From Mobula birostris (taxonomy: Eukaryota), in contig NC_092385.1 in the NCBI RefSeq assembly GCF_030028105.1, forward strand, positions 25,882,774-25,946,773: 64,000 nt of DNA. Reading direction: 5' to 3'. This document shows positions 1 through 64,000 of this stretch, piece after piece. Below the pieces are notes generated by a model. That model did no database searches and was not told the origin of the DNA. It saw only the letters and a program-made list of their open reading frames with translations. How positions within the stretch are numbered: position 1 is the stretch's first letter; each line of letters starts with the position of its first letter. The position numbers and the translations under genes are program-made.

Positions 1-1037
1 GAGGGGGAGATCAAAAATGATAGGAGAAGACAAGAGGGGGAGGGATGGAGCCAAGAGCTGGACAGGTGATTGGCAAAAAGGATACGAGAGGATCATGGGA
101 CAGGAGGTCTGGGAAGAAAGACGGGGGGGGGGGGGGGGGGGGGACCCAGAGGATGGGCAAGGGGTATATTCAGAGGGACAGAGGGAGAAAAAGGAGAGTG
201 AGAGAAAGAATGTGTGTATAAAAATAAGTTACAGATGGGGTACGAGGGGGAAGGGGGGCATTAGTGGAAGTTAGAGAAGTCGATGTTCATGCCATCAGGT
301 TGGAGGCTACCCAGACGGAATAGAAGGTGTTGTTCCTCCAACCTGAGTGTGGCTTCATCTTTACAGTAGAGGAGGCCGTGGATAGGCATGTCAGAATGGG
401 AATGGGATGTGGAATTAAAATGTGTGGCCACTGGGAGATCCTGCTTTCTCTGGCGGACAGAGCGTAGATGCTCAGCAAAGCGATCTCCCAGTCTGCGTTG
501 GCTCTCGCCGATATATAAAAGGCCACATCGGGAGCACCGGACGCAGTATATCACCCCAGTCGACTCACAGGTGAAGTGTTGCCTCACCTGGAAGGACTGT
601 TTGGGGCCCTGAATGGTGGTAAGGGAGGAAGTGTAAGGGCATGTGTAGCACTTGTTCCGCTTACAAGGATAAGTGCCAGGAGGGAGATCAGTGGGGAGGG
701 ATGGGGGAGACGAATGGACAAGGGAGTTGCGTAGGGAGCGATCCCTGCGGAAAGCGGGGAGGGGAGGGAAAGATGTGCTTAGTGGTGGGATCCCGTTGGA
801 GGTGGCGGAAGTTATGGAGAATAATATGTTAGACCCGGAGGCTGGTGGGATGGTAGGTGAGGACCAGGGGAACCCTATTCCTAGTGGGGTGGCGGGAGGA
901 TGGAGTGAGAGCAAATGTGCGTGAAATGGGGGAGATGCGTTTAAGAGCAGAGTTGATAGTGGAGGAAGGGAAGCCCCTTTCTTTAAAAAAGGAAGACATC
1001 TCCCTCGTCCTAGAATGAAAAGCCTCATCCCATGAAC
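1..1037 (-). mobile_element. Penelope-like retroelement 3' part (RT C-terminal linker + GIY-YIG endonuclease + pyrimidine-rich 3' UTR), in PDHB intron 2; continues off the left edge
   Basis: Translation contains GTYPCKRNKCYTCPY...FTCESTGVIYCVRCSRCGLLYIGESQRRLGDRFAEH (Penelope-type GIY-YIG with CCHH); near-identical inverted copy at 1486-2430. Confidence 0.9.
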
Positions 1038-1067
1038 AGAACCCAGCCGAAGGTGACCCCACTGTAC

Positions 1068-1127
1068 CTGAGCGGCCGCGGGCGCCGTCCGATGAAACTC
1101 CCTCCGTGTCCGCAGACCAAGGTTGCT
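1068..1127 (-). CDS. PDHB: Pyruvate dehydrogenase E1 beta, coding exon 2 (SNLGLRTRREFHRTAPAAAQ)
   Basis: ttcacacag|...|gtacag boundaries, 60 nt, phase 0; resembles vertebrate PDHB transit-peptide end (RRFHWTAPAALQ); expected synteny next to KCTD6. Confidence 0.85.
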
Positions 1128-1210
1128 CTGTGTGAACAATGACAACTCTGCGTTACTGCACAAGCCACAACCACTTTTCGTTCGCAACGTCAAAAGAATT
1201 TCGATCGCAC

Positions 1211-1246: not shown

Positions 1247-1485
1247 TTCTCGATGCGCCCTCAGAAGGCTGTCTGATGCCGAAACCCAGCCAATCAGCTG
1301 GTACGACACTATCTATGACTCATCATGCTTCTGTTTCGACTAATGCGAGCTGCGCGTACACTGTAGTTACATACTCAGCTTTCATTGGTGGGTGAGGCAA
1401 GCTCTCCCCGCCCATCGCTTGCGACGTCACCCACCAAAGGAGGAGGTGCAAAGTTTGTTTAAAGACGCTTATCCCAAGAGTTTCC
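1247..1485 (-). promoter_or_regulatory. PDHB: PDHB 5' UTR/proximal promoter (CpG-rich; CCAAT boxes ~1290 and ~1384, GC box ~1406, CRE-like GACGTCA ~1423, TGACTCA ~1316)
   Basis: Unique CpG-rich DNA directly upstream of the ATG with housekeeping promoter motifs. Confidence 0.6.
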
Positions 1486-2430
1486 TTTCCCTCCCCCACT
1501 CTCTCTGCATTCCGCAGGGATCGCTCCCTACACAACTCCCTTGTCCATTCGTCCCCCCCCATCCCTCCCCACTGATCTCCCTCCTGGCACCTATCTGTGT
1601 AAGCGGAACAAGTGCTACACATACCCTTACACTTCCTCCCTTACCACCATTCAGGGCCCCAAACAGTCCTTCCAGGTGAGGCAACACTTCACCTGTGAGT
1701 CGACTGGGGTGATATACTGCGTCCGGTGCTCCCGACATGGCCTTTTATATATTGGCGAGACCCGACGCAGACTGGGAGACCGCTTTGCTGAACATCTACG
1801 CTCTGTTCGCCAGAGAAAGCAGGATCTCCCAGTGGCCACACATTTTAATTCCACATCCCATTCCCATTCTGACATGTCTATCCACGGCCTCCTCTACTGT
1901 AAAGATGAAGCCACACTCAGGTTGGAGGAACAACACCTTATATTCCGTCTGGGTAGCCTCCAACCTGATGGCATGAACATCGACTTCTCTAACTTCCGCT
2001 AGGCCCCACCTCCCCCTCGTATCCCATCTGTTACTCATTTTTATGCACACATTCTTTCTCTCACTCTCCTTTTTCTCCCTCTGTCCCTCTGAATATACCT
2101 CTTGCCCATCCTCTGGGTCCCCCCCCCTTGTCTTTCTTCCCGGACCTCCTGTCCCATGATCCTCTCGTATCCCCTTTTGCCTATCACCTGTCCAGCTCTT
2201 GGCTCCATCCCTCCCCCTCCTGTCTTCTCCTATCATTTTGGATCTCCCCCTCCCCCTCCAACTTTCAAATCCCTTACTCACTTTTCCTTCAGTTAGTCCT
2301 GACGAAGGGTCTCGGCCTGAAACGTTGACTGTACTTCTTCCTACAGATGCTGCTTGGCCTGCTGCGTTCACCAGCAACTTTGATGTGTGTTGCTTGAATT
2401 TCCAGCATCTGCAGAATTCCTGTTGTTTGC
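1486..2430 (+). mobile_element. Penelope-like retroelement 3' fragment (GIY-YIG ORF 1541-2002, 3' UTR, hammerhead motif, tail)
   Basis: GIY-YIG motif GVIYCVRCSRHGLLYIGET; stop at 2002; CT-rich UTR; hammerhead motif at 2295-2330. Confidence 0.9.
2295..2330 (+). ncRNA. Minimal type I hammerhead ribozyme motif (GUU cleavage triplet)
   Basis: AGTC-CTGACGA-agg(gtctcgg)cct-GAAA-CG-TT-GACT: stem I AGTC/GACT, core, stem II, palindromic stem III AACGTT. Confidence 0.75.
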
Positions 2431-2431
2431 G

Positions 2432-3531: not shown

Positions 3532-3562
<31 letters not shown>
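3532..3562. repeat. (CA)n microsatellite
   Basis: Directly visible. Confidence 0.95.
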
Positions 3563-3564
<2 letters not shown>

Positions 3565-3660
3565 GCTGCAGTCATTCAGCAGGTCACACAGCTTCTATGG
3601 AATAGAACAAACAGTTGACATTTCAGGTCGAGGACCTTCTACAGGACTGGAACGGAACGG
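3560..3660 (-). mobile_element. Old Penelope-like tail with decayed hammerhead (3613-3648)
   Basis: Reverse complement agtc-CTGTAGA-aggtcctcgacct-GAAA-tgTC-aact followed by the ...gctgtgtgacctgctga tail. Confidence 0.6.
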
Positions 3661-6884: not shown

Positions 6885-6939
6885 GTTTAGAGAGTTATGG
6901 CCAATCACAAGCAAATTGGATTAGCTTAGTCACAGGGAC

Positions 6940-8125
6940 AATTGAATTGAATTTATTTCTTATATCCTTCACATACATAAGGAGTAAAAATCTTTACGTT
7001 ATGTCTCCATCTAAATATGCAATGTGCAATCATAGTAATTTCTAATAATTTATAATAAATAGAACAGTCAATGTAAATAATATAGAGTACACTCAAATCA
7101 GCGTGAGTTCATCAGTCTGATAGCCTGGTGGAAGAAGCTGTCCTGGAGCCTGTTGGTCCCAGCTTTTATGCTGCGGTACCGCTTCCCAGATGGTAGCAGC
7201 TGGAATAGATTGTGGTTGGGATGGCTTGGGTTCCCAATGATCCTTTGGGCCCTTTTTACACACCTGTCCTTGTAAATGTCCTGAATCATGCGAAGTTCAC
7301 AACTACAGATTCGCTGGACTGTCCGCACCACCCTCTGCAGAATCCTGCGATTAAGGGAGGTACAGTTCCCATACCAGGCAGTGATGCAGCCAGTCAGGAT
7401 GCTCTCAATTGTGCCCCTCTAGAAAGTTCTTAGGATCTGGGGGCCCATACTAAACTTTCTCAACCATCTGAGGTGAAAGAGGCGCTGTTGTGCCTTTTTC
7501 ACCACACAGCTGGTGTGTACAGACCACGTGAGGTCCTCGGTGATGTGGATGCCGAGGAACTTAAAGCTGTTCACCCTCTCAACCCCAGATCCATTGATGC
7601 CAATAGGGGTTAGCCCGTCTCCATTCCTCCTGTAATCCACAACCAGCTCCTTCGTTTTTGAGGGAGAGGTTGTTTCCTTGACACCTCTGTGTCAGAGAGA
7701 TGACTTCTTCCTTGCAGGCCACCTCATTATTGTTTGAGATTAGGCCAATCAATGTAGTGTCGTCGGCAAATTTAATTAGCAGATTGGAGCTGCGGGTGGC
7801 AACACAGTCATGGGTATACAGGGAGTAAAGGGGTATATATAAAGGAGTGTATAACTGTATAACTTTGTGAATCAGTGAAAATGGGGGGTACAAGTTTAGT
7901 GCATATGTCAAATGTCCTGACGAAGGGTTCCGGCCCAAAATGTCGACCGATCTTTTCCACAGATGCTGCCTGACCTGCTGAGTTCCTCCAGCATATTGTG
8001 AGTGTTCCTCTGTAAGTTGTGCCTGTTTTCTTGTATAGTCCCAGGTTGCCTGACTTGAATGCCACAGATCTAGCCCTCAGCAGACTATGAACCTCCTGGT
8101 TCATCCATGGCTATTGGTTCGGGTA
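6940..8125 (-). mobile_element. Rex1/Babar-type LINE fragment, interrupted at ~7835-8010
   Basis: YSLYTHDC...KFADDTTLIG RT motif, KKAQQRLFHL, LLPSGKRYRS C-terminal motif. Confidence 0.8.
7914..8010 (+). mobile_element. Short Penelope-derived insert beginning at a mutated hammerhead
   Basis: gtc-CTGACGA-agggttccggccc-AAAA-tgTC-gac followed by the gatgctgcctgacctgctgag tail. Confidence 0.65.
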
Positions 8126-8899
8126 CGTTTAAGTATATTTTCGTAATGATATGCTAAGGGCTGAAAGGTTGCTATGGATGGTTTCGAGTATAGAACTGAG
8201 GTTTCAGTCAGATCAGCCATGATCTTATTAAATGGCTGAGGAGGCCAGAGGAGAACAGTTGTCTATATCTGCTCCAAATTTGAATTCCTGTGTGTGTGCT
8301 GAATTCCGATTACTCTCTCTAAACACTGCTCCCTATCTCCCATCTCCACCTCCTTCTCACTTGCCATGGGTTCTCTTGTGCAGTGACGTCTTGAAACTAA
8401 CCTGTTTAACCTGATAAGAGATCCTCCTTTGTCTTGGGTATGATTCCACTCATCAGAGAATTTCCCCTACCGATTCATCATTTTACCAAGGCTCCTTAAT
8501 ACCCTTCTTGATCAGATGCTGTCTTGGTGTCAAGGGCAGTCACTCTCACCATCTCTGATTTCAGCTTTTAAATACATTTGTACCAGACGAGATGCTGCTT
8601 GACTTGCTGAGTTCCTCAAGCATTTTGTGTGTGTTGTTCAATACAGTTTTTCTACTATCTGTAGAATCTCTTGTGTTTAAACTTATATTTGTCTATTTTG
8701 TTGGTTGCTGAAATTTCATGCGAGACGTACACAGCAGACCAGCAGGGTCTGCGCAGAGAGAAACATGGTTAAGGTTTCTCGTCAATGACTTTTCATTAAA
8801 TCATACTCTGCGGAACACTTCCCACCCGAGGATAATTTATTTTTGCCTTTATGAATGATGGTGGTACTCTGTTCAAATGGTCACAGCTGTTGTTAATGA

Positions 8900-26930: not shown

Positions 26931-27702
26931 CTGTAAAATATGAGAAACATCTGTGCTCATGAATTCAACATTTTAAAATATCCAACAGTAATTCATTTTC
27001 TTTAGGGGGTTTTTCATTGGTCAATGTTTACTGTCAGGAAATCAACTACTCCAGTGCAGGGATACTAGCTAATTTGTGAAATGCAAGGTCCTAGACACAA
27101 CAAGATTAATGATTATATAATTCATTTTAAAACGCAAATGATAAAGGGATAGATGTTGGTCAATCTCCAATTCTGTAATAACATTTACTTCGTTCCCTAT
27201 TTTAGTCTATCTACATACTGATGTAGCTTGTTATTCCTTTAACCCAGCCAGAAGGAAATAAAGACAATTCAAATTCACAAATACTTCAGTATTCTCATAG
27301 GTAGTCTCGTACTCTCCACGTTACATAAACTGTTCATATAAAATTCTGCTTCCCATCTCCTTTCCCTGTTTCAACCCCAGAAAGTATTACCAAATTCTAA
27401 ACAGAAGCCTTGTCTATCCCATGCATCTTCTAATCATAGTATACCATATTCCAATTAACCCCCTTGGATCTTGCTGACCAGTTGTTCAAACTTTCAACAT
27501 TACTTCTACAGTAGATTATCACTAACTTTTTATTCCACATCTTAATATTTCTCGTTTAGGTGCTTCATTCCAGTGATACACGGTTGCTATATTTCGTTAT
27601 CCATGACAGCAGTAGATGGTCTCAATAAATCCCACACCCAATGTTCAATCTCTTGGCATGTTATTTCCTGACCTCAAACACTTTTCCCAGTGCCTATGCA
27701 CC

Positions 27703-27800
27703 CTGACGAAGGGTCTCGGCCTGAAACGTCGACTGCACCTCTTCCTAGAGATGCTGCCTGGCCTGCTGCGTTCACCAGCAATTTTTATGTGTGTTGCTTA
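27703..27800 (+). mobile_element. Short Penelope-derived insert starting exactly at the hammerhead core
   Basis: CTGACGA-agggtctcggcct-GAAACGTC-GACT plus tail; 5' strand of stem I missing. Confidence 0.8.
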
Positions 27801-36425: not shown

Positions 36426-36671
36426 TTCAAAGCATAATAGTCACTTTTCAAAAACCCTTCTAAAAAGATGAATTGATTTGGATGCAAAAACTATGGAGAT
36501 TTCAATACAATATGATCTGCTTGCATTAGAAAATTATAATACTTCACATAACAGCTTTTTAAAATGGTATATTTAATACTGACATGTCTTGAAGCTGGAT
36601 TTCATCATGGAAAATATAAAACAATTGAAACAATGCTAGAAAATTACTAGAAAAACAAAATGTTGATTTAC

Positions 36672-36947: not shown

Positions 36948-39900
36948 GGCATCCGTTAGTTTCATCAGACCATGGATTTGCCCCTTGGAAGATTTCCAGG
37001 GCACAGGCCTGGGCAAGGTTGTATGCAGGGCCGGACTTTAGGCAGGACTAGGCTGGGCTGCAGCCCAGGGGCCAGAGCTGCAGAGGGGCCCAAAATAGGT
37101 AGCTATCATCATGGTGGACAAAAAAAAAATACGAGAGTGGAGCACAGAAAAGAAAAAGAAACGAGAAAAAGAGGACCGTGAGAAAGAAGCATTAAAAAAG
37201 ACATTGAAATTGACAGAATTTTTAAAACCTGTTCTTGATGACGCAGCAGTACATCGCTCTTGTCACAGTCTGAGACCAGTGGACAAATGGAGACTTGTTC
37301 AACAGCTAGCGCTAGCACCAGCGTTAGCACAGGACCACCGTCCTTGCCACAATCAGCAGCTAACGTTGAAGAGGCAGAGAGCATGACTTTGGGATTCCCA
37401 ACTACAGAGGCCTCCAAACAACCAAGTCCGGCCACCATTAATGTTAATGTTACCGCTACTGAGGATCCTTACAGCCCTGATCCTGCTCGCTGGGGAAAGG
37501 AAATGTTAGATGATTCAGTTCGAGCATACTGGGCTAAGAAAGGGCCGGAGACCTGCCAGAATAAGGATGTGGATATCAAAGCTTCGGAACGAGTATACTA
37601 ACAGCAGAGAAGTTTTTTTCCCTCCAAATTTCACTTCAAACACAAGCTCGTAAATGGGCAATGTCTCTTATATTCCCCTTCCACTGGCTGTGTGTTTTGT
37701 TCTGCATGCCACATCTTCAATGATGGTAACTGTCAGTCCATCTTTGAAACTGGCTTTAACGACTGGAAACATGCCGCTGAGCACATAGGATTGCATGAAA
37801 ATAGAAGACACTGCAGGAAAACGATACTAACCTACGTTACACTAGCGTCTGATAGCGGAAGAATAGATACAGAACTGCAAAAACAGTTCGAGTCAGAGTG
37901 TGTCTACTGGACCGACGTATTAAGAAGAGTGGTGGCGGTTGTGAAGTTTTTGGTCAAGAGGGGATTGGCTATCCGAGACTCCAGTGACATACTTGGCAGG
38001 CCTGATAATGGCAACTACATGGGCATTCTACAGGTAATAAGTGAGTTTGACCCATTTTTGAAGGCGCACATACAGAAATTTGGAAATGCAGGATCAGGCA
38101 CCCCTTCATATCTTTCACCTAAAACATGTGAGGAGTTTATTGAGCTCATGAGCCATCGAGTTCTGTCAGAGATCGTCAGTGAAGTCAAAATGGCCAAATA
38201 CTTTTCGATTAGCATCGATTCAAGCACAAATGTTGCACACGTAGATCAGCTCACATTCATTTTACGTTATGTGTCAACTGATGAAAACATTCAGGAACGA
38301 TTCTTACGATTTCTACTCATTGAGAGCCACACAGGGGAGGCTTTATGTGAGTCTGTGCTCAAAGTTTCAGGAGCGATGAATATTGACATAAGCAACTGCA
38401 GGGGGCAGTGCTATGACAATGCTGCAAATATGTCCGGTGCATACAAAGGCTTACAATCCCACATCAAGGAAATCAATTCACTTGCTGAGTGGGTTCCATG
38501 TTCAACACACACATTGAATCTCGTTGGAATCAACAATGTCAACTGTTGTGTTGAAACAGCTGATTTTTCCAGCTTCGTACAGAATGTGTTCAACTTCTGC
38601 TCCAAGTCAACTTCTAGGTGGAAGGTGGTGACTGCAGGACTTCAACCTAATGCGAACAAGCGCATTGAAACTCTGAAGTTTCTCTCTAATACTACAGGGG
38701 CTGCACATGCAGAAGCCACACAGGCATTGTGCGGAAATTATGCCAATATTCAAGATTTGTGAAGGAGCATTGCAGATGACATTAATCAGAATGTGGCAAC
38801 TAGAAATGAAGTGCGGTCACTATACAAAAAAATGGACAAGCTTGAGATAGCTTTTCTGAGCAAATTGTGGCATTGTATTCTTCAGCGCTTTGAAACTGCA
38901 AGTGTTGCATTGCAAGCTGTAAGTCTAGTCCTGTGTATGTGGATTTGGTGAGATCACTACAGGGATACATAGCAAGCTTGCATGATCGATTTGATATTTT
39001 TGAGACCCAAGCTAAAACAATGTCTCCAACAGTCTCACAAGTGTACAAAGAAGACACCCAACGACAAAGAAAACGTAAAGCCTGTCTGGGTGAATCCACA
39101 ACAGCTGATGTTGGCTTGTCAGCCAGAGAAAAATTCTCAGCTACTGTTTTTTTGGTCGTGGTGGATGGATTACTTGCAGAAATTGATTGCAGATTTGCAT
39201 CATATAATGACCTTAACAACACATTTGGTATCCTAAACAATATCCCTTCTCTCTCTGTACAAGATCTGTGCGAGAGAGCATCTGAACTCTAAAGCAGATA
39301 TTCAGCTGACCTGGAGTTAGACTTTGTGGAGGAGATTGTCCATTTCAGGGAATTTGTAAGTGACAAAGATATTTCATCCACAACAGAGCTTTTATGCTTC
39401 CTCAGAGAAAAAACTTGCAGGTCATCTTCCCAAATGTAAGCATTGCTTTGAGACTTTACCTGACTCTCCCTGTCACAAATGCAAGTGAGCGATCCTTCTC
39501 CAAGCTCAAGCAAGTGAAAAATAGGCTCAGATCCACAATGGGACAGGACAAACTGAATCATCTTACTCTGATGTCACTTGAAAGTGATCTTGTTCAGAAA
39601 CTGGATTTTAGTGATCTGATCAAGGACTTTGCTGCAAAGTAATCCAGAAGAACTAGGCTTTAATTTTGAAAAACTTCGTAACTATCTAGGCTTGTGTGTC
39701 AGTGCTGTTCCTGTTTTTGTGGCAATAGGCTAATAGTTGACTGTTTACAAACCTAGCAAGTAATAAGTGGTCTTTACTCTGCAAGCCACACAGCACAGCA
39801 ATAGGTTATTATGTGCTAGATCTCATTTTTCAAAAAGATTGTTGGAGTATTGTCAAGTTTCCTAGTTTGCCATAGTGCCATCTCTCTTGGCCTTTTGGTC

Positions 39901-41911: not shown

Positions 41912-42560
41912 TGGTGGGCATTTTGCAGCAAAGACTGGGTGATCATTTTGCCAAGCACCTTCTCTCAGACTCAAAGGTGACTCACAACTCCATATTGCCT
42001 GCAAATTTAATTCTCCATCTAACACTCACTTTGACATATCTGTCTGAGACCTCGTTGGTCTCTGAGGCCCAATACAACGCTCAGGATCAACATGTTACCT
42101 ACCATCTTCTGGAATCAAGATGGAATTCTCCAATGTGCTTTTCCTTTCTGTCTCTATTAGAACTGAATATTTCTGGCAGACATTCATCTGTGACTTTCAC
42201 TCAATATTTTCTTTCCAATATGGAAAACTGGCCTCTGGGCACATTCCACAGCTCTGCTATTATGAACACACCAGACTGAGAGGCATAATGCACTTCAAGC
42301 TGCCACATTTACCCATCTAGTCTCACTGTTTCTGATATATTCCCTTTATTCTATGCATTCCCCTTCCTACCCTTTATTCTGTGCATTCCCCTTCCTATTT
42401 CTTTCTACTGGAAATTATTTTCTCTTTCTCAATTTTGACAAGCATTTCAGGCCCGCAATGTTCACTGTTTCTCTTTCCTCACATGCTACTTGACATGCTG
42501 CGAGCTTCCAGCATTTTTGGCTCTTATTTCAGACTTTTGGTATCTGCAGTTTTTGAAATT
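41912..42560 (+). mobile_element. Old Penelope-like GIY-YIG fragment and tail
   Basis: QRLGDHFAKHL remnant, CT-rich UTR, decayed tail. Confidence 0.55.
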
Positions 42561-42695: not shown

Positions 42696-45600
42696 AGATG
42701 AAAGTCCCGGAAGACCACATCTGCACCAGGTGTGTCGAGTTGCAGCTCCTGAGAAACTGCATTAGGGAACCGGAACTGCAACTCAATGACCTTCGTCTGG
42801 TCAGGGAGAGTGAGGAGGTGACAGAGGGGAGCTATAGGCAGGTAGTCACCCCGGGACCACAGGAGACAGAGAAGTGGGTAACAGTCAGGAGAGGGAAGGG
42901 CAAGAAGCAGGTGCTAGAGAGTACCCCAGTGGCTGTCCCTCCCTTAATAATAAGTACTCCTGTTTGAGTACTGTTGGGGGGGATGGCCTACCTGGGGGAA
43001 GCAACAGTGGTCACGCCTCTGGCACAGAGTCTCACCCTGTGGCTCAGAAGGGTAGGAAAAGGAAGAGGATGGCAGCAGTGATAGGGGACTCTATAGTTTG
43101 GGGGTCAGATAGGCGATTCTGTGGACGCAGGAAAGAAACGCAGATGGTAGTCTGCCTCCCAGGTGCCAGGGTCCAGGATGTTTCTGATCGCGTCCATGAT
43201 ATCTTGAAGTGGGAAGGAGAACAGCCAGAGGTCATGGTACATATTGGTACCAATGACATAGATAGAAAAAGGGAGGAGGTCCTGAAAACAGATCACAGGG
43301 AGTTAGGAAAGAAGTTGAGAAGCAGGACCTCAAAAGGTAGTAATCTCGGGATTACTGCCTGTGCCACGTGACAGTGAGTATAGGAATAGAATGAGGTGGA
43401 GGATGAATGCATGGCTGAGGGTTTGGAGTAGGGGGCAGGGATTCAGATTTCTGGATCATTGGGACCTCTTCTGGGGCAGGTGTGACCTGTACAAAAAGGA
43501 CAGTTACACTTGAATCCGAAGGGGACCAATATCCTGGCAGGGAGGTTTGCTAAGGCTATTGGGGAGAGTTTAAACTAGAATTGCTGGGGGGTGGGAACTG
43601 AACTGAAGAGATAGAGGAAGAGGCCGTTGGCTCACAAATAGAGAAAGCTTGGAGACAGTGTGAAAGGGAGGATAGGCGGGTGATAGAGAAGGAACGCGCT
43701 CAGACTGATGGTTTGAGATGTGTCTATTTTAATGCGAAGAGTATTATGAATAAAGTGGATGAGCTTAGAGTGTGGATCAGCACTTGGAGCTATGATGTTG
43801 TGGCCATTACAGAGACTAGGTTGGTACAGGAGCAGGAATGGCTACTTCAAGTGCTAGGCTTTAGATGTTTCAGAAAGGATAGGGAGGGAGGCAAAAGAGG
43901 TGGGGGCATGGCACTGTTGATCAGAGATAGTGTCACGGTTTAGAAAAGGAGGAAGTCATGGAGAGGTTGTCTACAAAGTCTCCGAGGGTGGAAGTTAGGA
44001 ATAGTAAGGGGTCAATAACTCCGGATATTTTTTTTATAGACCATCCAATAGTTACAGGGACATCAAGGAGCAGATGGGAGACAGATTCTGGAAAGGAGTA
44101 ATAATAACAGGGTTGTTGTGGTGGGAGGTTTTAATTTTCCAAATATTGATAGGCATCTCCCTAGAGTGAGGGGTTTAGATGGGGTAGAGTTTGTTAGGTG
44201 TGTTCAGGAAGGTTTCTTGACACAATATGTAGATAAGCCTACAAGAGGAGAGGCTGTATTTGATCTGGTATTGGGAAATGAACCTGGTCAGGTGTCAGGT
44301 CTCTCAGTGGGAGAGCATTTTGGAAATAGTGATCACAATTCTACATCCTTTACCACAGCATTGGAGAGGGATAGGAACAGACAAGATAGGGGAAACGTTT
44401 AATTGGAGTAAGGGGAAATATAAGGCTATCAGGCAGGAACTTGGGAGCATAAATTGGAAACAGAGGTTCACAGGGAAATGTACGGAAGAAATATGGCAAA
44501 TGTTCAGGGAATATTTGTGTGGGGTTCTGAGTATGTATGTTCCAATAAGACATGGAAAGGATGGTAGGGTATAAGATCCATGGTGTACAAAGGCTGTTGT
44601 AAATCTAGTCAGGAAGAAAAGAAGTTACGAAAGGTTCAAAAAACTAGGTAATGATAGGAATCTAGAAAATTAAGGCTAGCAGGAAGGAGCTTAAGAATGA
44701 AATTAGGAGAGCCAGAAAGGGCCATGAGAAGGCCTTGGCGGACAGGAATAAGGAAAACCCCAAGGCATTCTACAAGTATGCAAGAGGATAAGACGTGAGA
44801 GAATAGGACCAATCAAGTGCGACAGTGGAAAAGTATGTACGGAACCGGAGGAAATAGTGGAGGTACTAATGAATACTTTGCTTCAGTACTCACTATGGAA
44901 AAGGATCTTGGCGATTGTAGGGATGACTTGCCGTGGACTGAAAAGTTTGAGCATGTAGATATTAAGGAAGAGGATGTGCTGGAGTTTTTGGAAAGCATCA
45001 AGATGGCTAAGTCACCAGGACCGGATGGGATGTACCCCAGGCTACTATGGGAAGTGAAGGAGGAGATTGCTGAGCCTCTGGCAATGATCTTTGCATCATC
45101 AATGAGAACAGGAGAGGTTCCGGATGATTGGAGGGTTGCAGATGTTGTTCCCTTATTTAAGAAAGGGAGTAGGGATAGCCCAGGAAATTATAGGCTAGTG
45201 AGTCTTACTTCAGTGGTTGGTAAGCTGATGAAGAAGATCCTGAGAGGCAGGATTTATGAACATTTGGAGAGGCATAATATGATTAGGAATAGTCAGCATA
45301 GTTTTGTCAAAAGCAGGTTGTGCCTTTCGAGCCTGATTGAATTTTTTGAGGATGTGACAAAACATATTGATGAAGGTAGAGCCCTAGATGTAGTGTACAT
45401 GGATTTTAGCAAGGCATTTGATAAGGTACACCATGCAAGGTTTATTAAGAAAGTAAGGAGGCATGGGATCCAAGGGGACATTTCTTTGTGGATCCAGAAC
45501 TGGCTTGCCCACAGAAGGCAAACAGTGGTTGTAGATGGGTTATATTCTGCATGGAGGCCGGTGACCAGTGTGTGTCTCAGGGTTCTATTCTGGGACCCCT

Positions 45601-47092
45601 AATCCTTGTGATTTTTAAAAATGACCTGGATGAGGAAATGGAAGGATGGGTTAGTAAATTTGCTGATGACACAAAGGTTGGGGGTGTTGTGGACAGTGTG
45701 GAGGGCTGTCAAAGGTTACAATGGGACATTGATAGGATGCAAAACTGGGCTGAGAAGTGGCAGATGGAGTTCAACTCAGATAAGTGTGAGGTGGTTCATT
45801 CTGGTAGGTCAAATATGATGGCAGAATATAGCATTGATTAGATTAGATTAGATTCAACTTTATTGTCATTTTGCCGAGTACAGATACAAAGCCAATGAAA
45901 TGCATTTAGCACCTGACCAGAAATGCAAAGAATAGTGTTATTTACAAAATAACTGTGAATAAAAAATGTGCTACAGCACACAAATATAAAAGTACAGAGA
46001 CAGTACAATACGGATGCAATACTGCTTAGCACTGTGATCAGAGGTTCAGCAGTATCACAGCCTCAGGGAAGAAGCTCTTCCTGTGCCTGCTGGTGCGGGA
46101 GCTGGTGCTGGTAGCACCTACCGGATGGGAGGAGAGTAAAAAGTCCATGGTTAGGGTGAGATGCATCCCTGATAATGCTTTTCGCCCTGCCCAGGCAGCA
46201 TTTATGGTAGATGTTCTCAATGGAGAGCAATTGGGTGCCAATAATCCACTGGGCAGTTTTCACCACACGCTGGAGTGCTTTGCGGTCTGATACGGGACAA
46301 TTGCCATATCACACTGAGATGTAGTTGGTGAGTATGCTCTCAATGGTACAGCGGTAAAAGTAAATGGTAAGACTCTTGGCAGTGTGGAGGATCAGAGGGA
46401 TCTTGGGGTCTGAGCCCATCAGACACTCAAAGCTGCTACATTGGTTGACTCTGTGGTTAAGAAGGCATATGGTGCATTGGCCTTCATCAATCGTGGGATT
46501 GAGTTTAAGAGCCAAGAGGTAATGTTGCTGCTCTATAGGACCCTGGTCAGATCCCACTTGGAGTACTGTGCGCAATTCTGATCGCCTCACTACAGGAAGG
46601 ACGTGAAAACCATAGAAAGGGTGCAGAGAAGATTTACAAGGACGTTGCCTGGATTGGGGAGCATGCCTTATGAGAACAGGTTGAGTGAACTTGGCCTTTT
46701 CTCCTTTGAGTGACGGAGGATGAGAGGCGACCTAGTAGAGGTATACAAGATAATGAGAGGCATTGATCGTGTGGATAGTCAGAGGCTTTTCCCTAGGGCT
46801 GAAATGGCTAGCACGAGAGGTCACAGTTTTAAGGTGCTTGGAAGTAGGTACAGAGGAGATGTCGGGGTAAGTTTTTTTCTGCAGAGAGTGGTGAGTGCGT
46901 GGAATGGGTTGCTGGTGGTGGTGGTGGAGGCGGAAACAATAGGTTATTTTAAGAGACTCCTGGATGGCTACATGGAGCTTAGAAAAATAGAGGGCTATGG
47001 GTAAAGCCTAGGTAGTTCTAAGGTAGGGACATGTTCGGCACAGCTTTGTGGGCCGTAGGGCCTGCATTGTGCTGTAGGTTTTCTATGTTTCT
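42696..47092 (+). mobile_element. Near full-length CR1 LINE (ORF1 zf/LZ + SGNH esterase; ORF2 APE + RT), decayed and split by a Rex1 insertion
   Basis: HICTRCVELQLL, VIGDSIV, HIGTND (ORF1); [37 protein letters not shown] (ORF2); tttctatgtttcta tail. Confidence 0.92.
45838..46339 (-). mobile_element. Rex1/Babar-type 3' fragment nested in CR1
   Basis: FYRCTIESILTN...LLPSGR; (CTAAT)n tail at ~45838-45855. Confidence 0.8.
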
Positions 47093-47486
47093 AATTAGGA
47101 AAACAAATTGAATGCTGCGTTTTGGTGGAAGTAGATTGGAATGCAACACTGGAAAAGTCTTGCTTTTACTATACAGGTGAGAACACACCTGGAGCACCAG
47201 GTACAATTCCTTTGAATAATTTGATGAACCATATGTAGAGAAAGTTTGGAGAAGAATGAATCTCTTTCCACAGTTACTACCTGAACTGTTGCACGTGTTC
47301 AGCATTTGTTTTTTTATGTCAGACTTCCAGCACTTGCCATTTTTTTACCTAAACGTCTCTTACTCCAGAGTTGGAGTCAGCCGAGTATGAGAGGATGTAG
47401 TGGTGGAGGAAGAAAAAAACAACTTCTTCAAAAGATCTCCTGAAGAAAACAAAAGAGTAGAACCAAAATGCATTAAAAAAAATTAC

Positions 47487-47649: not shown

Positions 47650-49349
47650 CTAATAAAACAAAGAAAAAATTCTGGATTTAAAATGCAATATTTTATTTCA
47701 TTTGAAGTTTCTTTTTGAATTTAGATTAAATTTTGTACAAGTAGCTTTTGTAGTGCAAGTAGAACTCACTTTATAGAAAACAGACATCAGAGTTTCAGCT
47801 TTACAATAAAGACATCTGCATAGTAAGTGATCATGATTGTAGATTACAGGAAGTGAAGTGGAAATGTAAACTACAATGGATGAATGTTATGATCTTCATG
47901 GTTGTGAAAGTCAGAAGTTTGAGGGGTGCTTTCAGAGTAGCTTAGTTAGTAACTGATACGTGTTCTGAATTGTACGGGTGGGCTGGAGGCACTGTAAGTC
48001 CCAAAGCTCTGGTCTTCAGCATTATAGAGTGGATGTTGCCTGCCCCCGGAACCTATGCAGTATCCAATATTCCCAAGCGTTTGTTCGCTTCACATGCCAT
48101 GAGATGAATTGTCTGAAAACTGACTTCACTGATGGCACAGAATCAAGAGAAACTAAGGATTATCAATTTGGCAATTCTGGCTAAGTGTTTCAGCCTAGAC
48201 TTTGTACTTGCATGCCGGGCTCCGCCATTATTGAGGATGGGTTTGTTCTGAGATTTTTCATCTCCCATAACCTGCTCAATTGTCCACCACTATCTCCATC
48301 TAAATGTAGCAGGATTGCGGGAATTTGACCTGATCTGCAAAGTCCAATAGACAAAGCTGAATAATCTCCGTTGAGCAATATATGTGACCCATAACCAGAG
48401 GTATACATTTTTCTTAACTGGTCTGTGAAATAGTCTAGTGAGCTAGTCAGTTCAGGGCCAATAAATGCTGGTATAGTTTGCATTGCCCAAATACGTACAA
48501 AAGTTGAGGTGTTTACTTATGATGTAATGTTCGATTTTATTTGCAATTTCTCAGAAAAAGAAGCAACCCGTGTCTGGAAGCAGCAAGATCTGGAGAACAT
48601 TCAGACACAACAAAGTGTTTTCCAGGTGAATTTTAACTCATTTTCTTTTTCCACAGATGCTGCCTGACCTGCTGAGTATTTCCAGCCTTTCTAATGACCG
48701 AAATAGATTCTTTTCAAATCCATCTCCAATGGGTGAAAGCTTATTCTGAAAAAATGAACCCTACTTCAACATGCAAATACCAGGGGAAAAAATCCTCTCA
48801 ATATCTACTCTGTCAATTCCCACTTTTCAATTTTCTAAACACAAAATAGCATAGGCCCCGTTTTGATCAATGTTTCCGATGCTAACTCCTTCTTCTGATG
48901 CATTGATCTAATGAACCCACTTTGCACTGTCTTCACTCAGGTATGTTATTCTTTAAACATGGATCTGAAAGTTAAACATAGTAGTCCAGATGACATTTCA
49001 CCAACGCTCTGTAAAACTGCATCAACATTCCCTACTTTTACACTCATGCCTTTTGTAGTAAATGCAGACATTCCATTAGCCTTCCGAATTACTTGCTGAA
49101 TCAGCATACTGACTTTGTACTTCATTCATTGAGCTCACTTTTTCAAACTAAAAATATTTCTTCATTCTTACTTCCAAATGTTCCCACTTTATACTAGGTA
49201 TTAACATTTTGTTCACTTATTTTACTTATACATTCAAGAATCTCAACACCGTACAGGATGGGGCAGCTCACTTAGTGTGCACCATATCAACTCCTTCACT
49301 CACCCCACCACTGAGGCATTGTAGAAGTGTTTTGTACCCTCTCTATGGT

Positions 49350-50504: not shown

Positions 50505-50637
50505 AAGTTTCTCATTTGCTCATTAAATGGCGCATATGTCACCATCTACTATCCCGAGCTTCGTTTTTTGCATGCATTCACAGTAGAACAAAGAAATACC
50601 ATAGAATCAATGAAAGCTATCAATGACAAACCACCAA

Positions 50638-50759
50638 CACACGAGGAAATCTGCAAATGCTGGAATTTCAAGCAACACACATAAGAGTTGCTGGTGAACA
50701 CAGCAGGCCAGGCAGCATCTCTAGGAAGAGGTACAGTCGACGTTTCAGGCCGAGACCCT
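50638..50759 (-). mobile_element. 122-bp Penelope-derived insert with an 18-bp TSD and truncated hammerhead
   Basis: TSD TCAATGACAAACCACCAA at 50620-50637 and 50760-50777; begins at stem II, CUGAnGA missing. Confidence 0.85.
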
Positions 50760-50960
50760 TCAATGACAAACCACCAATGCACAAAAGATATTTCGGGCAT
50801 CACGTTACGAAGAGAGGCCTGGAAAATGGATGTTGTCATTGAATGACCGAACAGCCTGGTTTGCTGAGGTGTGTTTTCTTTACAGGATTTATGTTTGGCT
50901 GTCAACCTCCAACCCGGGAAGTAATTGACGACGGGCGAGTGCTGGTCGGGCGGCACTCAC

Positions 50961-51096: not shown

Positions 51097-51260
51097 GCCG
51101 ACTGCACCCTGAACACTCTCCAGGCCCTAGGAGACTTTGCGGAGTCCGTCTCCCATCAGACGCAGCCCTCCGACCAACTAACCAACCAGTGGCCGAGCGC
51201 TCCGTCTTATTACCATGCCTATTGGCTGGTTCCACTGTCAATCAATTGTCAATTCTCTTC
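51097..51260 (-). promoter_or_regulatory. ACOX2: ACOX2 5' UTR/proximal promoter, CpG-rich, CCAAT box ~51221
   Basis: CpG enrichment and cagccaat on the minus strand. Confidence 0.5.
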
Positions 51261-51660
51261 CAGTAAGGAAGTTTTCTAGGATTTTTGAGCAGGCTGTAAA
51301 CTATTTTGTTATTCGCTGTGCACGAAGTATTACTTTCGAGGGAAGTCACGTTCCCATAACAAATTTAGATATTTTTATTTTAAAATTATATGGATTTCAC
51401 AAAATAACTATTCCTGAAAGTGGTTAGAGTGAATGTTTGCGCACAGCATACTGTTGTCCTGTCCAGTGAAAGTTTGCTAGCTCTCATCGAAGGTGAATAG
51501 TCCAGTAGGTTTATCGGGAAGATTGGTGGCAGTTTGTAAATATTTACTTTTACAACACACTGCCTAATTTTGCCGGTTATTGCTAGTTTTGTCTTATTAT
51601 TTCAGATTTCCACAAACTATCCACGTTCAGGCGAGGTATGAAGCGGCAGCGCCAGATGTG

Positions 51661-51832
51661 AGCAACACACATCAAAGTTGGTGAGACTCTTCCTTCAGGT
51701 AGTCCTGACGAAGGGTCTCGGCCTGAAACGTCGACTGTACCTCTTCCTAGAGATGCTGCCTGGCCTGCTGCGTTCACCAGCAACTTTGATGTGTGTTGCT
51801 TGAATTTCCAGCATCTGCAGAATTCCTCTTGT
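51661..51832 (+). mobile_element. Short Penelope-derived insert with an inverted 5' tail piece
   Basis: 51661-51684 is an inverted copy of ~51774-51800; body matches 2283-2425. Confidence 0.85.
51701..51736 (+). ncRNA. Intact minimal type I hammerhead ribozyme motif (GUC cleavage triplet)
   Basis: AGTC-CTGACGA-agggtctcggcct-GAAA-CG-TC-GACT; all core nucleotides present. Confidence 0.82.
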
Positions 51833-52104
51833 TAGCGCCAAATGTGAACTATTTTCACACTATTATGTTTATTTTATCATACTTTCTTACTATACAGCAT
51901 ACTTCTTTATCTGTGGAATGTGTGTTTCCCATCAGCGGATACAACCTGTTCCATTCCCTGTCTGTACATTGCGATGGAGTCATAACGTAGAGATTTTTAA
52001 TCCCTCACATTGTGAGACGGATGTAAGATCTAAATAAATAAATTAAAATTAAAATTCGCTTATTTCACTCGCTTGCATACCCGGCAACTATTGAAAAGTT
52101 CAAA

Positions 52105-53056
52105 GAACTTATTAGAAAAACAAGACTTTCATCGGTATTTACAGATGCAACAGTATGTTAATAGGACGGTTAAAAATGTAACCAGGGCAAGTACATGTCT
52201 GATAGAGCTATTTAGAAAAGCATATAATTTAGACAACGGTAGTAGAATCGTTTCAAGCGTGTATAAGGGTTTGTCAAATCTTAAAACATTCGACTTCATA
52301 CATTAAAACAAAATGGGAGAAGGAAGGAGGGATAATAATATCTGAGGAAGACTGGACAATAATATGGAGGTATCAATGGAAGTGTACCAGTTCACAGAAA
52401 TAGAGGGAGTTCGGGTGGAAAAACTTGATAAGATATTTTATTACACCCTCTCAGAAATCCCATTATGATAGTAACCTCCCTGTTTGCTGGAAAAATTGTG
52501 GAAGTCAAAATGCAAACCATTATCACATTTTCTGGGAATGTCCCGTTATCAAAGACTGTTGGAATGGGATTCATAATGCCCTACTAGACATCTTTAAATG
52601 TGAAATGCCCTTAGAGAGTAAGACCATATATTTTAGGTATATACCTCAAGAATGGTTGAAAAGAGATAAATATTTAATGAATATACTACTGGTGGCCCTT
52701 ACCAGGAAATGGTTATCACAGGAGAGCCCAACGTTAAATGTATGGATGGAAATTACGATGGACATTTACAAAATAGAAAAGATTGTTAATCATAAGTTGG
52801 AACAATTTGATTCATACTGGGAAAAATAGTTTAACTACATAACACCTCATAGGCCTGATTTTATTCTCACAAGTCAATGAATATGTTGTAAAAAAAAGAT
52901 CACCCCCTACTTTGTACATATATACCTCAGATAAATATTATGTGGAGATTTGTGACAAATATGATTACATGATATATATGTACAGTATCTGAAATACATC
53001 TTATGGAAATGTTTGTTTGATGATGAAATTCAATTTTAAAAAATTACAAAAAAAGT
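52105..53056 (+). mobile_element. L1-type LINE 3' fragment
   Basis: CWKNCGSQNANHYHIFWECP zinc-knuckle region, A-rich tail. Confidence 0.8.
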
Positions 53057-56147: not shown

Positions 56148-56450
56148 TAAACACAAGAGATTCTGCAGATGCTGGAAATCCAGAGCAACACACACAAGGC
56201 TGGAGGAACTCAGGATGGTCAGGCATCATCTATGGAAGTGAATAAACAGTCGACGTTTTAGGCCGAAAATGGAAAGGAAGGGGAAGAGTACGAAGGTGGG
56301 GGGTGGGGAAGAGGGGAAATAGTGCACGCTAGGAGGTGATTGGTGAAGCCAGGTGGGTGGGAGAGGGGGAATGAAGTAAGAAGCTGGGAGATGATAGATG
56401 GAAAAGGTAAACGTCTAGAAGGAATCTGATAGGAGAGGGTGGAATATGGG
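56148..56450 (-). mobile_element. Penelope-like 3' UTR/tail with the hammerhead core deleted
   Basis: Reverse complement ...tcggcctaaaacgtcgactg plus tail; no CUGAnGA. Confidence 0.65.
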
Positions 56451-59120: not shown

Positions 59121-59276
59121 ATATTTTGCCCCTCAGCATTTGCAGCCAGTCAGAGGTGGGTTGCTGAGTCTTCACTGCATGCCCCTCTGTTGGGCAAATC
59201 TTTCAACCTCCTTATCACAGGGAGGAATAAAGCCTTTTTAAATCACCCTTACTTGAGTGTAGGTGCTTGGCAAAGT

Positions 59277-59920
59277 GGTACTGTATCCGGTGCTCCCAGT
59301 GTAGCCTCCTGTACATCAGTGAGACCCGACGTTGATTGAGAGACCGCTTCGCCGAGCACCTATGCTCTGTCCACTAAGAAAAAGCGGAATCTCCCGGTGT
59401 CCACCCATTTTTATTCCACTTCCTATTTTGACATGCCAGTTCATGGCCACCTCTACTGCTGCAATGAGGCCACACCCAGGTTGCAGGAGAAACACCTTAT
59501 ATTTCATCTGGGTAGCCTCCAACCTGATGGCAAGATCATTGATTTCTTGAACTTCTGGTAATGACCCTCTCCCCTCAGCGTTCCCCAACCCTATTTTCTT
59601 CTCTTTCCTCATCTCATTCCCTGCCCATCACTTCCCTCTGGTGCTCTGCTTCCTGCGCTTCCTTTCATGGCCTTCTGTCATCTCCTTCTCCATCTCTTTC
59701 ACCAATCGACTTCCCAGCTCTTTATTTCACCACTCCAGGTCTCACCTATCACTGACTACAGTACCTTGTATTTCTTCCTCCCCTTCCCCCACCTTCTTAC
59801 TCTGACTTCTTGTCTTCTTTTCTCCAGTTCTGATGAATGGTCTCGGCCTGAAATGTCGACTGTTTACTCTTTTCCGTAGATGCTGCCTGGTCCGCCGTGT
59901 TCTTCCAGCATTTTGTCTGT
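59277..59920 (+). mobile_element. Penelope-like fragment with a partly decayed hammerhead (59826-59861)
   Basis: GIY-YIG remnant; agtt-CTGATGA-atggtctcggcct-GAAA-tgTC-gact. Confidence 0.75.
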
Positions 59921-60130
59921 TAACTGCCATATTAGATGCTTTGGGATAAGTTCAAGGTAAAACTTACTTTACCCACAGTGTATGCAAGCAGGAAAGATTA
60001 ATTGGTCCCTTGCTCCCATTATGTCCTCCAATAAAATTATGATGCACCTCAGCATCACTTTCCTTCAATGTCCTTATTACTCTTGATTCCCTTAACATCT
60101 AAAAAGTAATTTTTTTTTGGCATTTCAAAC

Positions 60131-63767: not shown

Positions 63768-64000
63768 ACATTCAGTTTGTTGCCAAACCACAGCCTCAGT
63801 CCCAGGTTCTCAACACCAGCTCACTCTGCGTCTGTGCCTTGAGAAACAATAATAATGCCTCCATTGCCCTTCCCATTTGTGTCAGGATAATTGCATTTTT
63901 AAAAAACTGCACCTCACAAAAGGTCCATTTCTATATCAGTATCTGTGGTCTGGGTAGCTTTCGACCTGATGGCATAAATATTGATTTATCTAATTTCCAG

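What the first reader, a model, noticed from the sequence alone, without database searches (positions are those of the whole stretch)
51701..51736. Intact minimal hammerhead ribozyme, one of at least 8 copies dispersed through the window
Seen: AGTC-CUGACGA-[agg gucucgg ccu]-GAAA-CG-UC-GACU, with stem I, full catalytic core, stem II and a loop-less palindromic stem III (ACGU). Related copies lie at 2295(+), 3613(-), 7914(+), 27703(+), 50735(-), 56247(-) and 59826(+). Established: Penelope-like elements carry minimal type I hammerheads that are thought to cleave as dimers through the palindromic stem III. Inference: at about one copy per 8 kb here, the genome may carry a very large number of self-cleaving modules able to pair in trans.
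Basis: partly seen in the sequence, partly recalled or inferred. Interest (0 to 1): 0.8.

Follow-up and report, generated by a model that had tools for sequence, protein, structure and literature searches.

The report
Hammerhead motif in Penelope retrotransposon tail
The 36-base hammerhead ribozyme motif is real, but it is the usual passenger carried in the 3' end of a very abundant Penelope-like retrotransposon, and most nearby copies are already broken.

Summary
The motif at 51701-51736(+) is exactly as described and is not a chance match. My own minimal-hammerhead descriptor finds 2 complete motifs in the window, against 0.01 expected.

It sits 15 nt inside a 148-bp dispersed repeat, 51686-51833. 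Thirteen pieces of that repeat lie in the window.

Two copies continue upstream, on the same strand, into the C-terminal end of a GIY-YIG endonuclease ORF. Two are flanked by 14-bp and 18-bp target-site duplications. These are 5'-shortened 3' ends of Penelope-like elements (PLEs), whose minimal dimer-type hammerheads are already in print (PMC4209133).

The other six are truncated, deleted or mutated in the core.

The family is huge: 47,716 contigs of one DNA run match it at 85% identity or more.

The 8 local copies show no compensatory changes. Between two PLE families, however, the hammerhead is the best-conserved block of the 3' UTR (86% against 46% upstream).

Trans pairing through ACGU is very weak, -1.7 to -3.1 kcal/mol. 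Cleavage could not be tested, because only contigs and no raw reads were available.

This scan already holds 401 notes on the same theme elsewhere in this genome. The finding is ordinary.

The parts
51701..51736 (+). Complete minimal type I hammerhead motif. Predicted cut after C51732, so the 3' product would start at 51733. Helix II is G.U, G-C, G-C, U.G with an unpaired A before it.
51686..51833 (+). 148-bp 5'-shortened copy of the PLE 3' end that carries the motif. The 3' end at 51833 is shared by the family.
   Evidence: loose ends behind 51833 (471 contigs in X1)
51643..51683 (-). Short inverted fragment of the same tail (matches 51778-51800), joined head-to-head to the copy above. A possible 7-bp duplication AGCGCCA (51648-51654 and 51834-51840) would enclose both.
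   Evidence: the 7-bp match is weak
1484..2431 (+). PLE copy B: GIY-YIG ORF end (1541-2002), CT-rich 3' UTR, complete hammerhead with GUU (2295-2330), and tail. Flanked by the 14-bp duplication TATCCCAAGAGTTT (1470-1483 and 2432-2445).
1..1193 (-). PLE copy A, inverted relative to B (1-772 is 93% identical to 1485-2252). GIY-YIG ORF at 261-1193. Its tail runs off the window start.
27702..27799 (+). Tail copy starting at CCTGACGA; helix I 5' strand missing. The BLAST match stops at the equivalent of 51801.
50638..50759 (-). 122-bp tail copy starting inside the hammerhead core. Perfect 18-bp target-site duplication (50620-50637 and 50760-50777).
56149..56268 (-). Tail copy of another subfamily. 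The CT-rich UTR upstream is present, the CUGANGA box is deleted, and G12>A.
7908..8047 (+). Older tail copy. The hammerhead has G12>A and AUGU; helix II is GGGU/GCCC with C at 11.1.
59252..59956 (+). Second PLE family: frameshifted GIY-YIG coding end (59252-59555), UTR, then a hammerhead at 59826-59861 with its core kept, helix II closing pair broken, and AUGU.
3547..3653 (-). Old tail copy. The hammerhead at 3613-3648 has A6>U and a helix I mismatch. It abuts a (CA)n run.
8589..8676 (+). Tail fragment without a hammerhead. Further fragments lie at 42447-42519(+), 47255-47336(+) and 48646-48692(+).
63941..64000 (+). End of another PLE endonuclease coding region, cut by the window end.

Best explanation
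The motif is the minimal, loop-3-less type I hammerhead that Penelope-like retrotransposons carry in their terminal repeat. Here it lies in the 3' UTR, about 290 nt after the endonuclease stop codon and 101 nt before the fixed 3' end of insertions.

Shown:
- The copy at 51686-51833 is a short, 5'-shortened insertion of that tail.
- It belongs to a family with tens of thousands of distinct contig variants.
- Most local copies have lost the motif through truncation, deletion or CpG decay.

Inferred from the literature and from conservation: in master elements, the hammerhead in the repeated termini processes the element's own RNA. It would act as a dimer between two tethered copies, or with help from the element's protein. 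Reverse transcription starts at an internal site downstream, so every daughter insertion long enough (about 135 nt or more) carries a hammerhead as a passenger.

At this locus the motif most likely does nothing. It has no partner on the same strand within 49 kb, and its helix III can form only in trans.
For: - Exact motif. Not chance.
- Dispersed 148-bp repeat with a common 3' end and variable 5' ends.
- GIY-YIG domain above Pfam's cutoff (25.9 bits against 22.6) in ORF 1541-2002, directly upstream of hammerhead 2295 on the same strand. A second family shows the same layout at 59252-59956.
- 14-bp and 18-bp target-site duplications.
- Between the two families: ORF end 82% identical, UTR before the hammerhead 46%, hammerhead 86% (32/37), next 44 nt 64%.
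- Genome-wide variant table: no variant at 5% or more in CUGA.GA or GAAA. The two frequent non-CpG-pair variants turn G.U into G-C: 51724 T>C at 33% (giving G10.1-C11.1) and 51738 T>C at 27%.
- Published traits are present: an unpaired nucleotide after A9, palindromic 15.2-16.2, short helix I, thousands of dispersed single motifs from truncated PLEs: PMC4209133, whole main text read.
- In the Anolis element PAc, reverse transcription starts internally about 85-92 nt past the hammerhead cut. The geometry here is similar (101 nt): PMC11167929, passages.
Against: - No reverse-transcriptase domain is contiguous with any hammerhead copy in the window, and there is no full-length element with two terminal repeats, so the tandem context is not seen here.
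- No Rfam hammerhead model matches.
- 0 of 10 helix pairs show a compensatory change among the 8 local copies.
- In this copy the 10.1-11.1 pair is G.U, not the G-C of the published consensus.
- The predicted monomer fold is an inactive rod at -10.0 kcal/mol, against -6.0 for the hammerhead-compatible fold.
- Cleavage is untested: all runs were contigs, which cannot show RNA ends.
- In PAc, cleavage was not needed for insertion in vitro, and no RNA-seq reads ended at the cut site.
Confidence: 0.85

Rival explanations
1. The conserved hammerhead-shaped block is kept in PLE masters mainly as a structured RNA element for binding the element's protein or positioning reverse transcription, not for catalysis.
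For: - In PAc, catalytic-core mutants did not change insertion in vitro, and no RNA-seq ends were found at the cut site.
- Metazoan min-HHRs cleave poorly in vitro even as dimers.
- Conservation continues for about 44 nt past the motif (64%).
- The monomer prefers a rod fold.
Against: - The positions that stay invariant are exactly the catalytic ones: no variant at 5% or more in CUGA.GA or GAAA.
- The PAc hammerhead does cleave when its protein is present, with a C3/G8 rescue.
- PLEs of plants and fungi carry canonical, active hammerheads.
Confidence: 0.25
2. One reading: dispersed copies form a genome-wide pool of self-cleaving modules that pair in trans through ACGU and cut host transcripts.
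For: - High density: 8 hammerhead-related copies in 64 kb.
- Thousands of contigs in runs guessed to be RNA contain the element.
- The palindromic ACGU is intact in 4 of the 8 copies.
Against: - Only 2 of 8 copies are complete, and they lie 49 kb apart.
- The ACGU duplex is worth -1.7 to -3.1 kcal/mol; the AUGU form is worth 0.
- A single motif was inactive in vitro.
- The 'RNA' label of the runs is a guess, and contigs show no ends.
Confidence: 0.05
3. The short copies come from a separate non-autonomous element (a SINE-like or non-LTR retrozyme derivative of the PLE terminus) whose unit starts at the hammerhead, rather than from 5' truncation of autonomous PLEs.
For: - Many contigs diverge exactly at 51701/51702: 425 + 180 loose ends in X1.
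- Several 'goes back' joints land on 51700-51704, meaning head-to-tail copies exist somewhere (tables 5 and 5c).
- A preprint derives animal retrozymes from PLE terminal repeats (10.64898/2026.07.22.740005; abstract, Results part 1).
Against: - The loose letters before 51701 share a CT-rich consensus. This is the PLE UTR of other subfamilies, not a true end.
- Local 5' ends are scattered: the equivalents of 51686, about 51704 and about 51712.
- There is no tandem array of the unit in the window.
- Two copies run on into the endonuclease ORF.
Confidence: 0.1
4. Chance resemblance to a hammerhead.
For: No Rfam hammerhead hit.
Against: - 0.01 expected against 2 found.
- The motif is the most conserved UTR block between two PLE families.
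- It matches the published PLE min-HHR design.
Confidence: 0.01

Closest known systems
Minimal hammerheads (min-HHR) of metazoan Penelope-like elements (Cervera & de la Pena 2014, PMC4209133). Lunse, Weinberg & Breaker 2016/17 was seen only as a reference; that paper is not held.
   Same: Type I topology. No loop 3, with a palindromic 15.2-16.2. Short helix I. An unpaired nucleotide between A9 and 10.1. Location in the PLE terminal region next to an RT/GIY-YIG ORF. Mostly dispersed single motifs from truncated elements. Consensus families within a genome.
   Different: Helix II here is short: 4 pairs, two of them G.U, against 6-8 bp described for Schistosoma and Drosophila. In this copy 10.1-11.1 is G.U; C at 11.1 is the minority form (33% of depth). 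The family looks far larger than the roughly 4,000-9,000 motifs called remarkable for coelacanth and Xenopus, but I have no proper count.
PAc (Poseidon of Anolis carolinensis) hammerhead and internal reverse-transcription start (PMC11167929)
   Same: The hammerhead lies upstream of a fixed internal 3' end of insertions: cut-to-end 101 nt here, about 85-92 nt in PAc. There is a possible second, shorter 3' end about 33 nt upstream (51798-51800; 25-29 contigs), resembling the optional 30-40 bp 'tail'.
   Different: In PAc the ORF starts inside the hammerhead. Here no open frame starts in or after the motif within the inserted tail: ATG 51752 runs into TGA at 51800. The protein dependence of cleavage is untested here.
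Non-LTR retrozymes and classical dimeric type I hammerheads of newt and Schistosoma satellites (PMC7229834, listing and abstract only; preprint 10.64898/2026.07.22.740005)
   Same: A type I hammerhead with an unstable helix III that needs a second copy. An evolutionary link to PLE termini has been proposed.
   Different: Those are tandem arrays that yield circular RNAs, with canonical loop-loop contacts. The copies here are dispersed, single and duplication-flanked.

Membership tests
Hammerhead ribozyme, minimal PLE type | Core C3 U4 G5 A6 N7 G8 A9 and G12 A13 A14 | tested here: met
   CUGACGA and GAAA at 51705-51711 and 51725-51728. The full core is kept in 4 of the 8 local copies: 51701, 2295, 27703 and 59826.
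Hammerhead ribozyme, minimal PLE type | A15.1-U16.1 and a cleavable NUH triplet | tested here: met
   A-CG-U then C17 (GUC) at 51728-51732. Copy 2295 has GUU.
Hammerhead ribozyme, minimal PLE type | Helix I closing the 5' and 3' ends (type I) | tested here: met
   AGUC/GACU plus two G.U pairs, 6 pairs in all.
Hammerhead ribozyme, minimal PLE type | Helix II hairpin with an unpaired nucleotide after A9 | tested here: met
   In the bulged-A register 89.7% of cells are paired, against 71.4% without the bulge.
Hammerhead ribozyme, minimal PLE type | G10.1-C11.1 closing pair (highly conserved per PMC4209133) | tested here: not met
   This copy has G.U (T at 51724). C at 51724 holds 33% of depth in X1 and is seen in copy 7914.
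Hammerhead ribozyme, minimal PLE type | Palindromic 15.2-16.2 without loop 3 (helix III forms only in a dimer) | tested here: met
   ACGU at 51728-51731. The duplex is worth only -1.7 to -3.1 kcal/mol.
Hammerhead ribozyme, minimal PLE type | Covariation supporting helices I and II | tested here: inconclusive
   0 of 10 pairs show a change on both sides in 8 copies. There are only one-sided G.U/G-C changes, locally and genome-wide. The copies are few and are decaying neutrally.
Hammerhead ribozyme, minimal PLE type | Site-specific self-cleavage | not testable with these tools
   Only contigs were available, no raw reads.
Rfam hammerhead families | Score at or above the gathering threshold of a curated covariance model | tested here: not met
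   0 matches in the whole window. No hammerhead family at E<=10 on 51500-51950. This is expected if those models require a helix III hairpin (my recollection of the models, not tested).
Penelope-like element | GIY-YIG endonuclease domain in the element's ORF | tested here: met
   ORF 1541-2002(+) scores 25.9 bits against a cutoff of 22.6. Copy A scores 18-20 bits. The nearest Atlas clusters are eukaryotic GIY-YIG proteins at 0.96. tblastn finds 4 coding pieces in the window.
Penelope-like element | Telomerase-like reverse transcriptase upstream of the endonuclease | tested here: inconclusive
   No RVT hit contiguous with the endonuclease pieces. All four pieces are 5'-shortened or decayed. The RT ORFs elsewhere in the window were not linked to the hammerhead copies: one carries an endonuclease/exonuclease/phosphatase-type domain, the other two gave RVT_1 only.
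Penelope-like element | Terminal direct repeats (pLTRs), each with a hammerhead | tested here: not met
   No full-length element in the window. The hammerhead is seen only 3' of the ORF.
Penelope-like element | Variable 5' truncation, target-site duplications of variable length, inverted or adjacent partner copies | tested here: met
   Duplications of 14 and 18 bp. 5' ends are scattered. Inverted pairs at 1-772/1485-2252 and 51643-51683/51686-51833.
Penelope-like element | Optional 30-40 bp 'tail' (two 3' ends) | tested here: inconclusive
   Main end at 51833. Minor loose ends at 51798/51800 (25 and 29 contigs in X10 and X13). For copy 27703 the BLAST match stops at the equivalent of 51801, but nhmmer runs on and no duplication fixes its end.
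Non-LTR retrozyme | Head-to-tail tandem array of a unit containing the hammerhead | tested here: not met
   TRF finds no such array in the window. The copies are dispersed.

The most novel reading that the evidence does not exclude
A joint that runs from 51806 back to 51733, exactly the first base after the predicted GUC cut, stands in one contig each of three runs guessed to be RNA, from two organisms. It is not in the listed rows of the DNA run.

If it arises at the RNA level, it would be a footprint of hammerhead cleavage in vivo: a 5'-OH end at 51733 either captured by template switching or ligated into a 74-nt circle. It would also mean that these vertebrate min-HHRs really cut in cells, which published RNA-seq on the Anolis element did not show.
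Probability: 0.08. Interest if true: 0.6.

Novelty: new member of a known kind. Interest (0 to 1): 0.2.

Why it matters
It matters little beyond annotation. These motifs should be labelled as Penelope-like tails, so that they are not taken for independent ribozyme genes.

Two points may be worth a specialist's time:
- The family looks very large. If a proper count confirms 10^5 or more motifs, this genome would be a good place to ask statistically whether hammerhead-cleaved RNAs are ever used as templates.
- The hammerhead is an island of conservation between PLE families. That supports selection on it in master elements, although in vitro work has found cleavage dispensable for insertion.

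Tried and rejected
- Rfam at gathering score on the whole window and at E<=10 around the motif: no hammerhead family. I took this as a limit of the models, not as evidence against the motif.
- One scan of metagenome contigs with a pattern that left helix II free: 12 loci. All are chance matches in unrelated, mostly GC-rich sequence with no helix II and no tail homology, so they were dropped. No outside copies were obtained for covariation.
- PDB sequence search with the endonuclease region: nothing.
- Lunse et al. (PMC5785218) is not held. I saw it only as a citation.
- Depth ratios between the 'RNA?' and DNA runs along the element fall upstream of the cut. I rejected this as evidence because the tool states that contig depth cannot rank parts of a gene.
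- Summed depth on the element is about 4.2-4.6 million, against about 4 on the unique flanks in X1. The tool says this is not a copy number, so I give only an order-of-magnitude impression.
- Search for local copies whose 5' end sits at the cut site: the old fragments at 47255, 48646 and 8589 start somewhere after the motif, but their ends are too decayed to place.
- I first read copy 56247 as 5'-truncated. Alignment A1 shows the upstream CT-rich UTR is present and the core box is deleted.
- The search for homologous proteins and the search of protein representatives were not used. The Pfam hit above cutoff was enough, and the cost was not justified.
- I did not ask for supplementary files. 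The supplementary figures of PMC4209133 (vertebrate min-HHR families) could show whether this very family has already been drawn.
- I make no claim that it is absent from print.

Full report
**Observation.** It has all the parts of a type I hammerhead without loop 3:
- the CUGANGA and GAAA boxes;
- A15.1 and U16.1 around a palindromic CG;
- C17 (GUC), with the predicted cut between 51732 and 51733;
- a helix I of four Watson-Crick pairs, extendable by two G.U pairs.

The 36-mer with up to three mismatches occurs three times, against none in 100 shuffles. A descriptor of my own required CUGANGA, helix II of at least 3 pairs, GAAA, NN, U, H and helix I of at least 3 pairs. It finds two complete motifs on both strands, at 2294-2331 and 51699-51738. 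In 200 second-order Markov simulations the mean was 0.01 and the maximum 1. Rfam gives nothing at gathering score in the whole window and no hammerhead family at E<=10 around the motif.

**What carries the motif.**
- BLAST of 51201-52300 against the window and alignment A1 show a roughly 150-bp repeat, 51686-51833.
- Copies lie at 2280-2431(+), 27702-27799(+), 50639-50761(-), 56153-56266(-), 7914-7993(+) and 59826-59910(+). An old copy lies at 3547-3653(-).
- nhmmer with a profile built from these eight finds 13 pieces at E<=0.024 (the eight by construction, five new) and three more rows above E 0.1, which I ignore.
- The copies share a 3' end (...CTGCAGAATTCCTCTTGTT) and differ at the 5' end.

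**Link to Penelope-like elements.**
- BLAST of 1-3000 shows that 1485-2252(+) continues upstream of the 2295 copy. It is 93% identical to an inverted copy at 1-772.
- ORF 1541-2002(+) hits Pfam GIY-YIG at 25.9 bits (cutoff 22.6). The inverted copy's ORF 261-1193(-) hits more weakly. Its translation shows the Cys-rich linker and the GVIY...YIG motifs.
- A second family, about 76% identical at the DNA level, has the same layout: coding end at 59252-59555 and hammerhead at 59826.
- So in two of the eight copies the hammerhead lies about 270-295 nt after the endonuclease stop, on the same strand.
- Copy B (1484-2431) is flanked by a 14-bp duplication. The 122-bp copy at 50638-50759 is flanked by a perfect 18-bp duplication.
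- For the copy in question I find only a 7-bp candidate, AGCGCCA. It would enclose both the direct copy and a short inverted tail fragment at 51643-51683.
- No reverse-transcriptase domain is contiguous with these pieces, and no full-length element lies in the window.

**State of the eight motifs.**

| Copy | State |
|---|---|
| 51701 | complete, GUC |
| 2295 | complete, GUU |
| 27703 | helix I 5' strand lost |
| 50735 | starts inside the core |
| 56247 | core box deleted, G12>A |
| 7914 | G12>A |
| 3613 | A6>U |
| 59826 | core kept; helix II closing pair broken; ACGU decayed to AUGU |

Complete motifs occur about once per 32 kb.

**Structure.**
- The monomer's predicted minimum-energy fold is a rod at -10.0 kcal/mol, in which core GACG pairs with CGUC at the cut site. 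Hammerhead-compatible folds score -6.0 (unpaired A, then G.U, G-C, G-C, U.G) or -4.6.
- Among the eight copies no pair shows a compensatory change: 0 of 10 in either register. The register with the unpaired A keeps 89.7% of helix II cells paired, against 71.4% for the other.
The test is weak, though, because the copies are few, close and decaying neutrally.
- The comparison between the two PLE families is more telling:

| Block | Identity |
|---|---|
| ORF end | 82% |
| UTR before the motif | 46% |
| Hammerhead | 86% (32/37) |
| Next 44 nt | 64% |
| Last 55 nt | 35% |

- Four of the five differences in the motif fall on N7, H17, a C-G to U.G change, or the CpG of helix III.

**Genome-wide view.**
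- All 24 runs offered were Logan contigs. None is on record as RNA.
- I laid 51400-52100 at 85% identity or more on one DNA run that may be the source (X1), two 'RNA?' runs of the same organism (X6, X10) and one of a second organism (X13).
- 47,716, 5,322, 7,116 and 9,531 contigs were laid. Almost all of the summed depth falls on 51664-51855, apart from a lesser peak (hundreds to about 2,300) on a second repeat at 51952-52047.
- In X1 the identity classes are 7,550 (99% or more), 16,144 (95-99%), 19,138 (90-95%) and 4,884 (below 90%).
- Variants reaching 5% within the motif are:
  - CpG transitions at 51719/20, 51729/30 and 51732/33;
  - T>C at 51724 (33% of depth in X1), which turns G10.1.U11.1 into the canonical G-C.
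- Just 3' of the motif, T>C at 51738 (27%) turns the sixth helix I pair from G.U into G-C. A>G at 51739 reaches 5% or more only in the three 'RNA?' runs.
- No variant reaches 5% in CUGA.GA or GAAA.
- Loose ends behind 51833 (471 contigs in X1) mark the family's 3' end. Minor ends at 51798/51800 (25 and 29 contigs in X10 and X13) may be a second, tail-less end.
- Loose ends before 51701/51702 (425 + 180 in X1) carry a CT-rich consensus. That is the diverged UTR of other subfamilies, so similarity between subfamilies begins exactly at helix I.

**Mechanism.**
- PMC4209133 (main text read) describes these minimal hammerheads in the terminal repeats of metazoan PLEs. It reports thousands of dispersed single motifs from truncated elements, no cleavage by single motifs, and low cleavage by dimers.
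- PMC6765202 (passages) summarises the dimer model and the need for a tandem layout.
- PMC11167929 (passages) shows four things for the Anolis element:
  - the hammerhead cleaves only with the element's protein present;
  - core mutants do not affect insertion in vitro;
  - no RNA-seq reads end at the cut;
  - reverse transcription starts internally, 111-118 nt into the ORF, with the cut at +26.
- The 101-nt distance here from cut to insertion end fits that geometry.
- The ACGU/ACGU duplex is worth -1.7 kcal/mol, or -3.1 with flanking bases. The AUGU form is worth 0. Pairing between separate transcripts is therefore implausible without tethering or protein.
- I conclude that the motif works, if at all, in master elements. 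The copy at 51701 is a passenger.

**Comparison and novelty.**
- The kind is known, and the local copy fits it. The deviations are a short helix II and G.U at 10.1-11.1.
- The scan holds 401 notes with 'hammerhead' and 'Penelope' in this genome and two notes on this same window.
- I could not check repeat libraries, or the supplements of PMC4209133, to see whether this family is already catalogued.

**Unexplained.** A joint from 51806 back to 51733, the base after the cut, appears in one contig each of X6, X10 and X13. It is not among X1's listed rows. A further 25 joints were not shown, the 'RNA' label is a guess, and contigs drop rare variants. I treat it as a lead only.

Noticed in passing
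window 51806 -> 51733 (table 5): A 'goes back 74' joint whose acceptor is exactly the first base after the predicted hammerhead cut. It appears in one contig each of three runs guessed to be RNA (two organisms) and in none of the listed rows of the DNA run.
   Followed up: partly
window 1-772(-) and 1485-2252(+): Two Penelope-like copies lie head-to-head at 93% identity. The right-hand one alone is enclosed by a 14-bp target-site duplication, so they look like neighbouring insertions rather than a single event.
   Followed up: partly
window 51643-51683(-) next to 51686-51833(+): A short inverted piece of the same tail is joined to the 5' end of the direct copy. It overlaps in content with the direct copy (51778-51800), so it is not a classical twin-priming inversion. 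A possible 7-bp duplication encloses both.
   Followed up: partly
window 51724 and copy 7914: C at position 11.1 followed by G12 forms a CpG. The common T (G.U closing pair) and the G12>A seen in copies 7914 and 56247 both look like CpG decay products of an ancestral GGCCCGAAA.
   Followed up: partly
window 10158-10946(+): Intron-less ORF of 262 aa with a BTB_2 (potassium-channel tetramerisation type) domain, E 2.9e-22. Probably a host KCTD-like gene.
   Followed up: no
window 23667-25280(+), 35744-36487(-), 44817-45602(+), 37692-38762(+): Other mobile-element remains. One ORF carries endonuclease/exonuclease/phosphatase-type and RT domains, which makes it LINE-like. There are two further RT pieces and a DUF4371 transposase-like ORF.
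   Followed up: no
window 51952-52047: A second, unrelated repeat just downstream. Summed contig depth reaches hundreds to about 2,300 in X1. It is related to 6951-7011(-) and 26590-26659(+) in the window.
   Followed up: no
window 3507-3547: A (CA)n microsatellite and a GC-rich run abut the 3' end of the old tail copy at 3547-3653(-).
   Followed up: no
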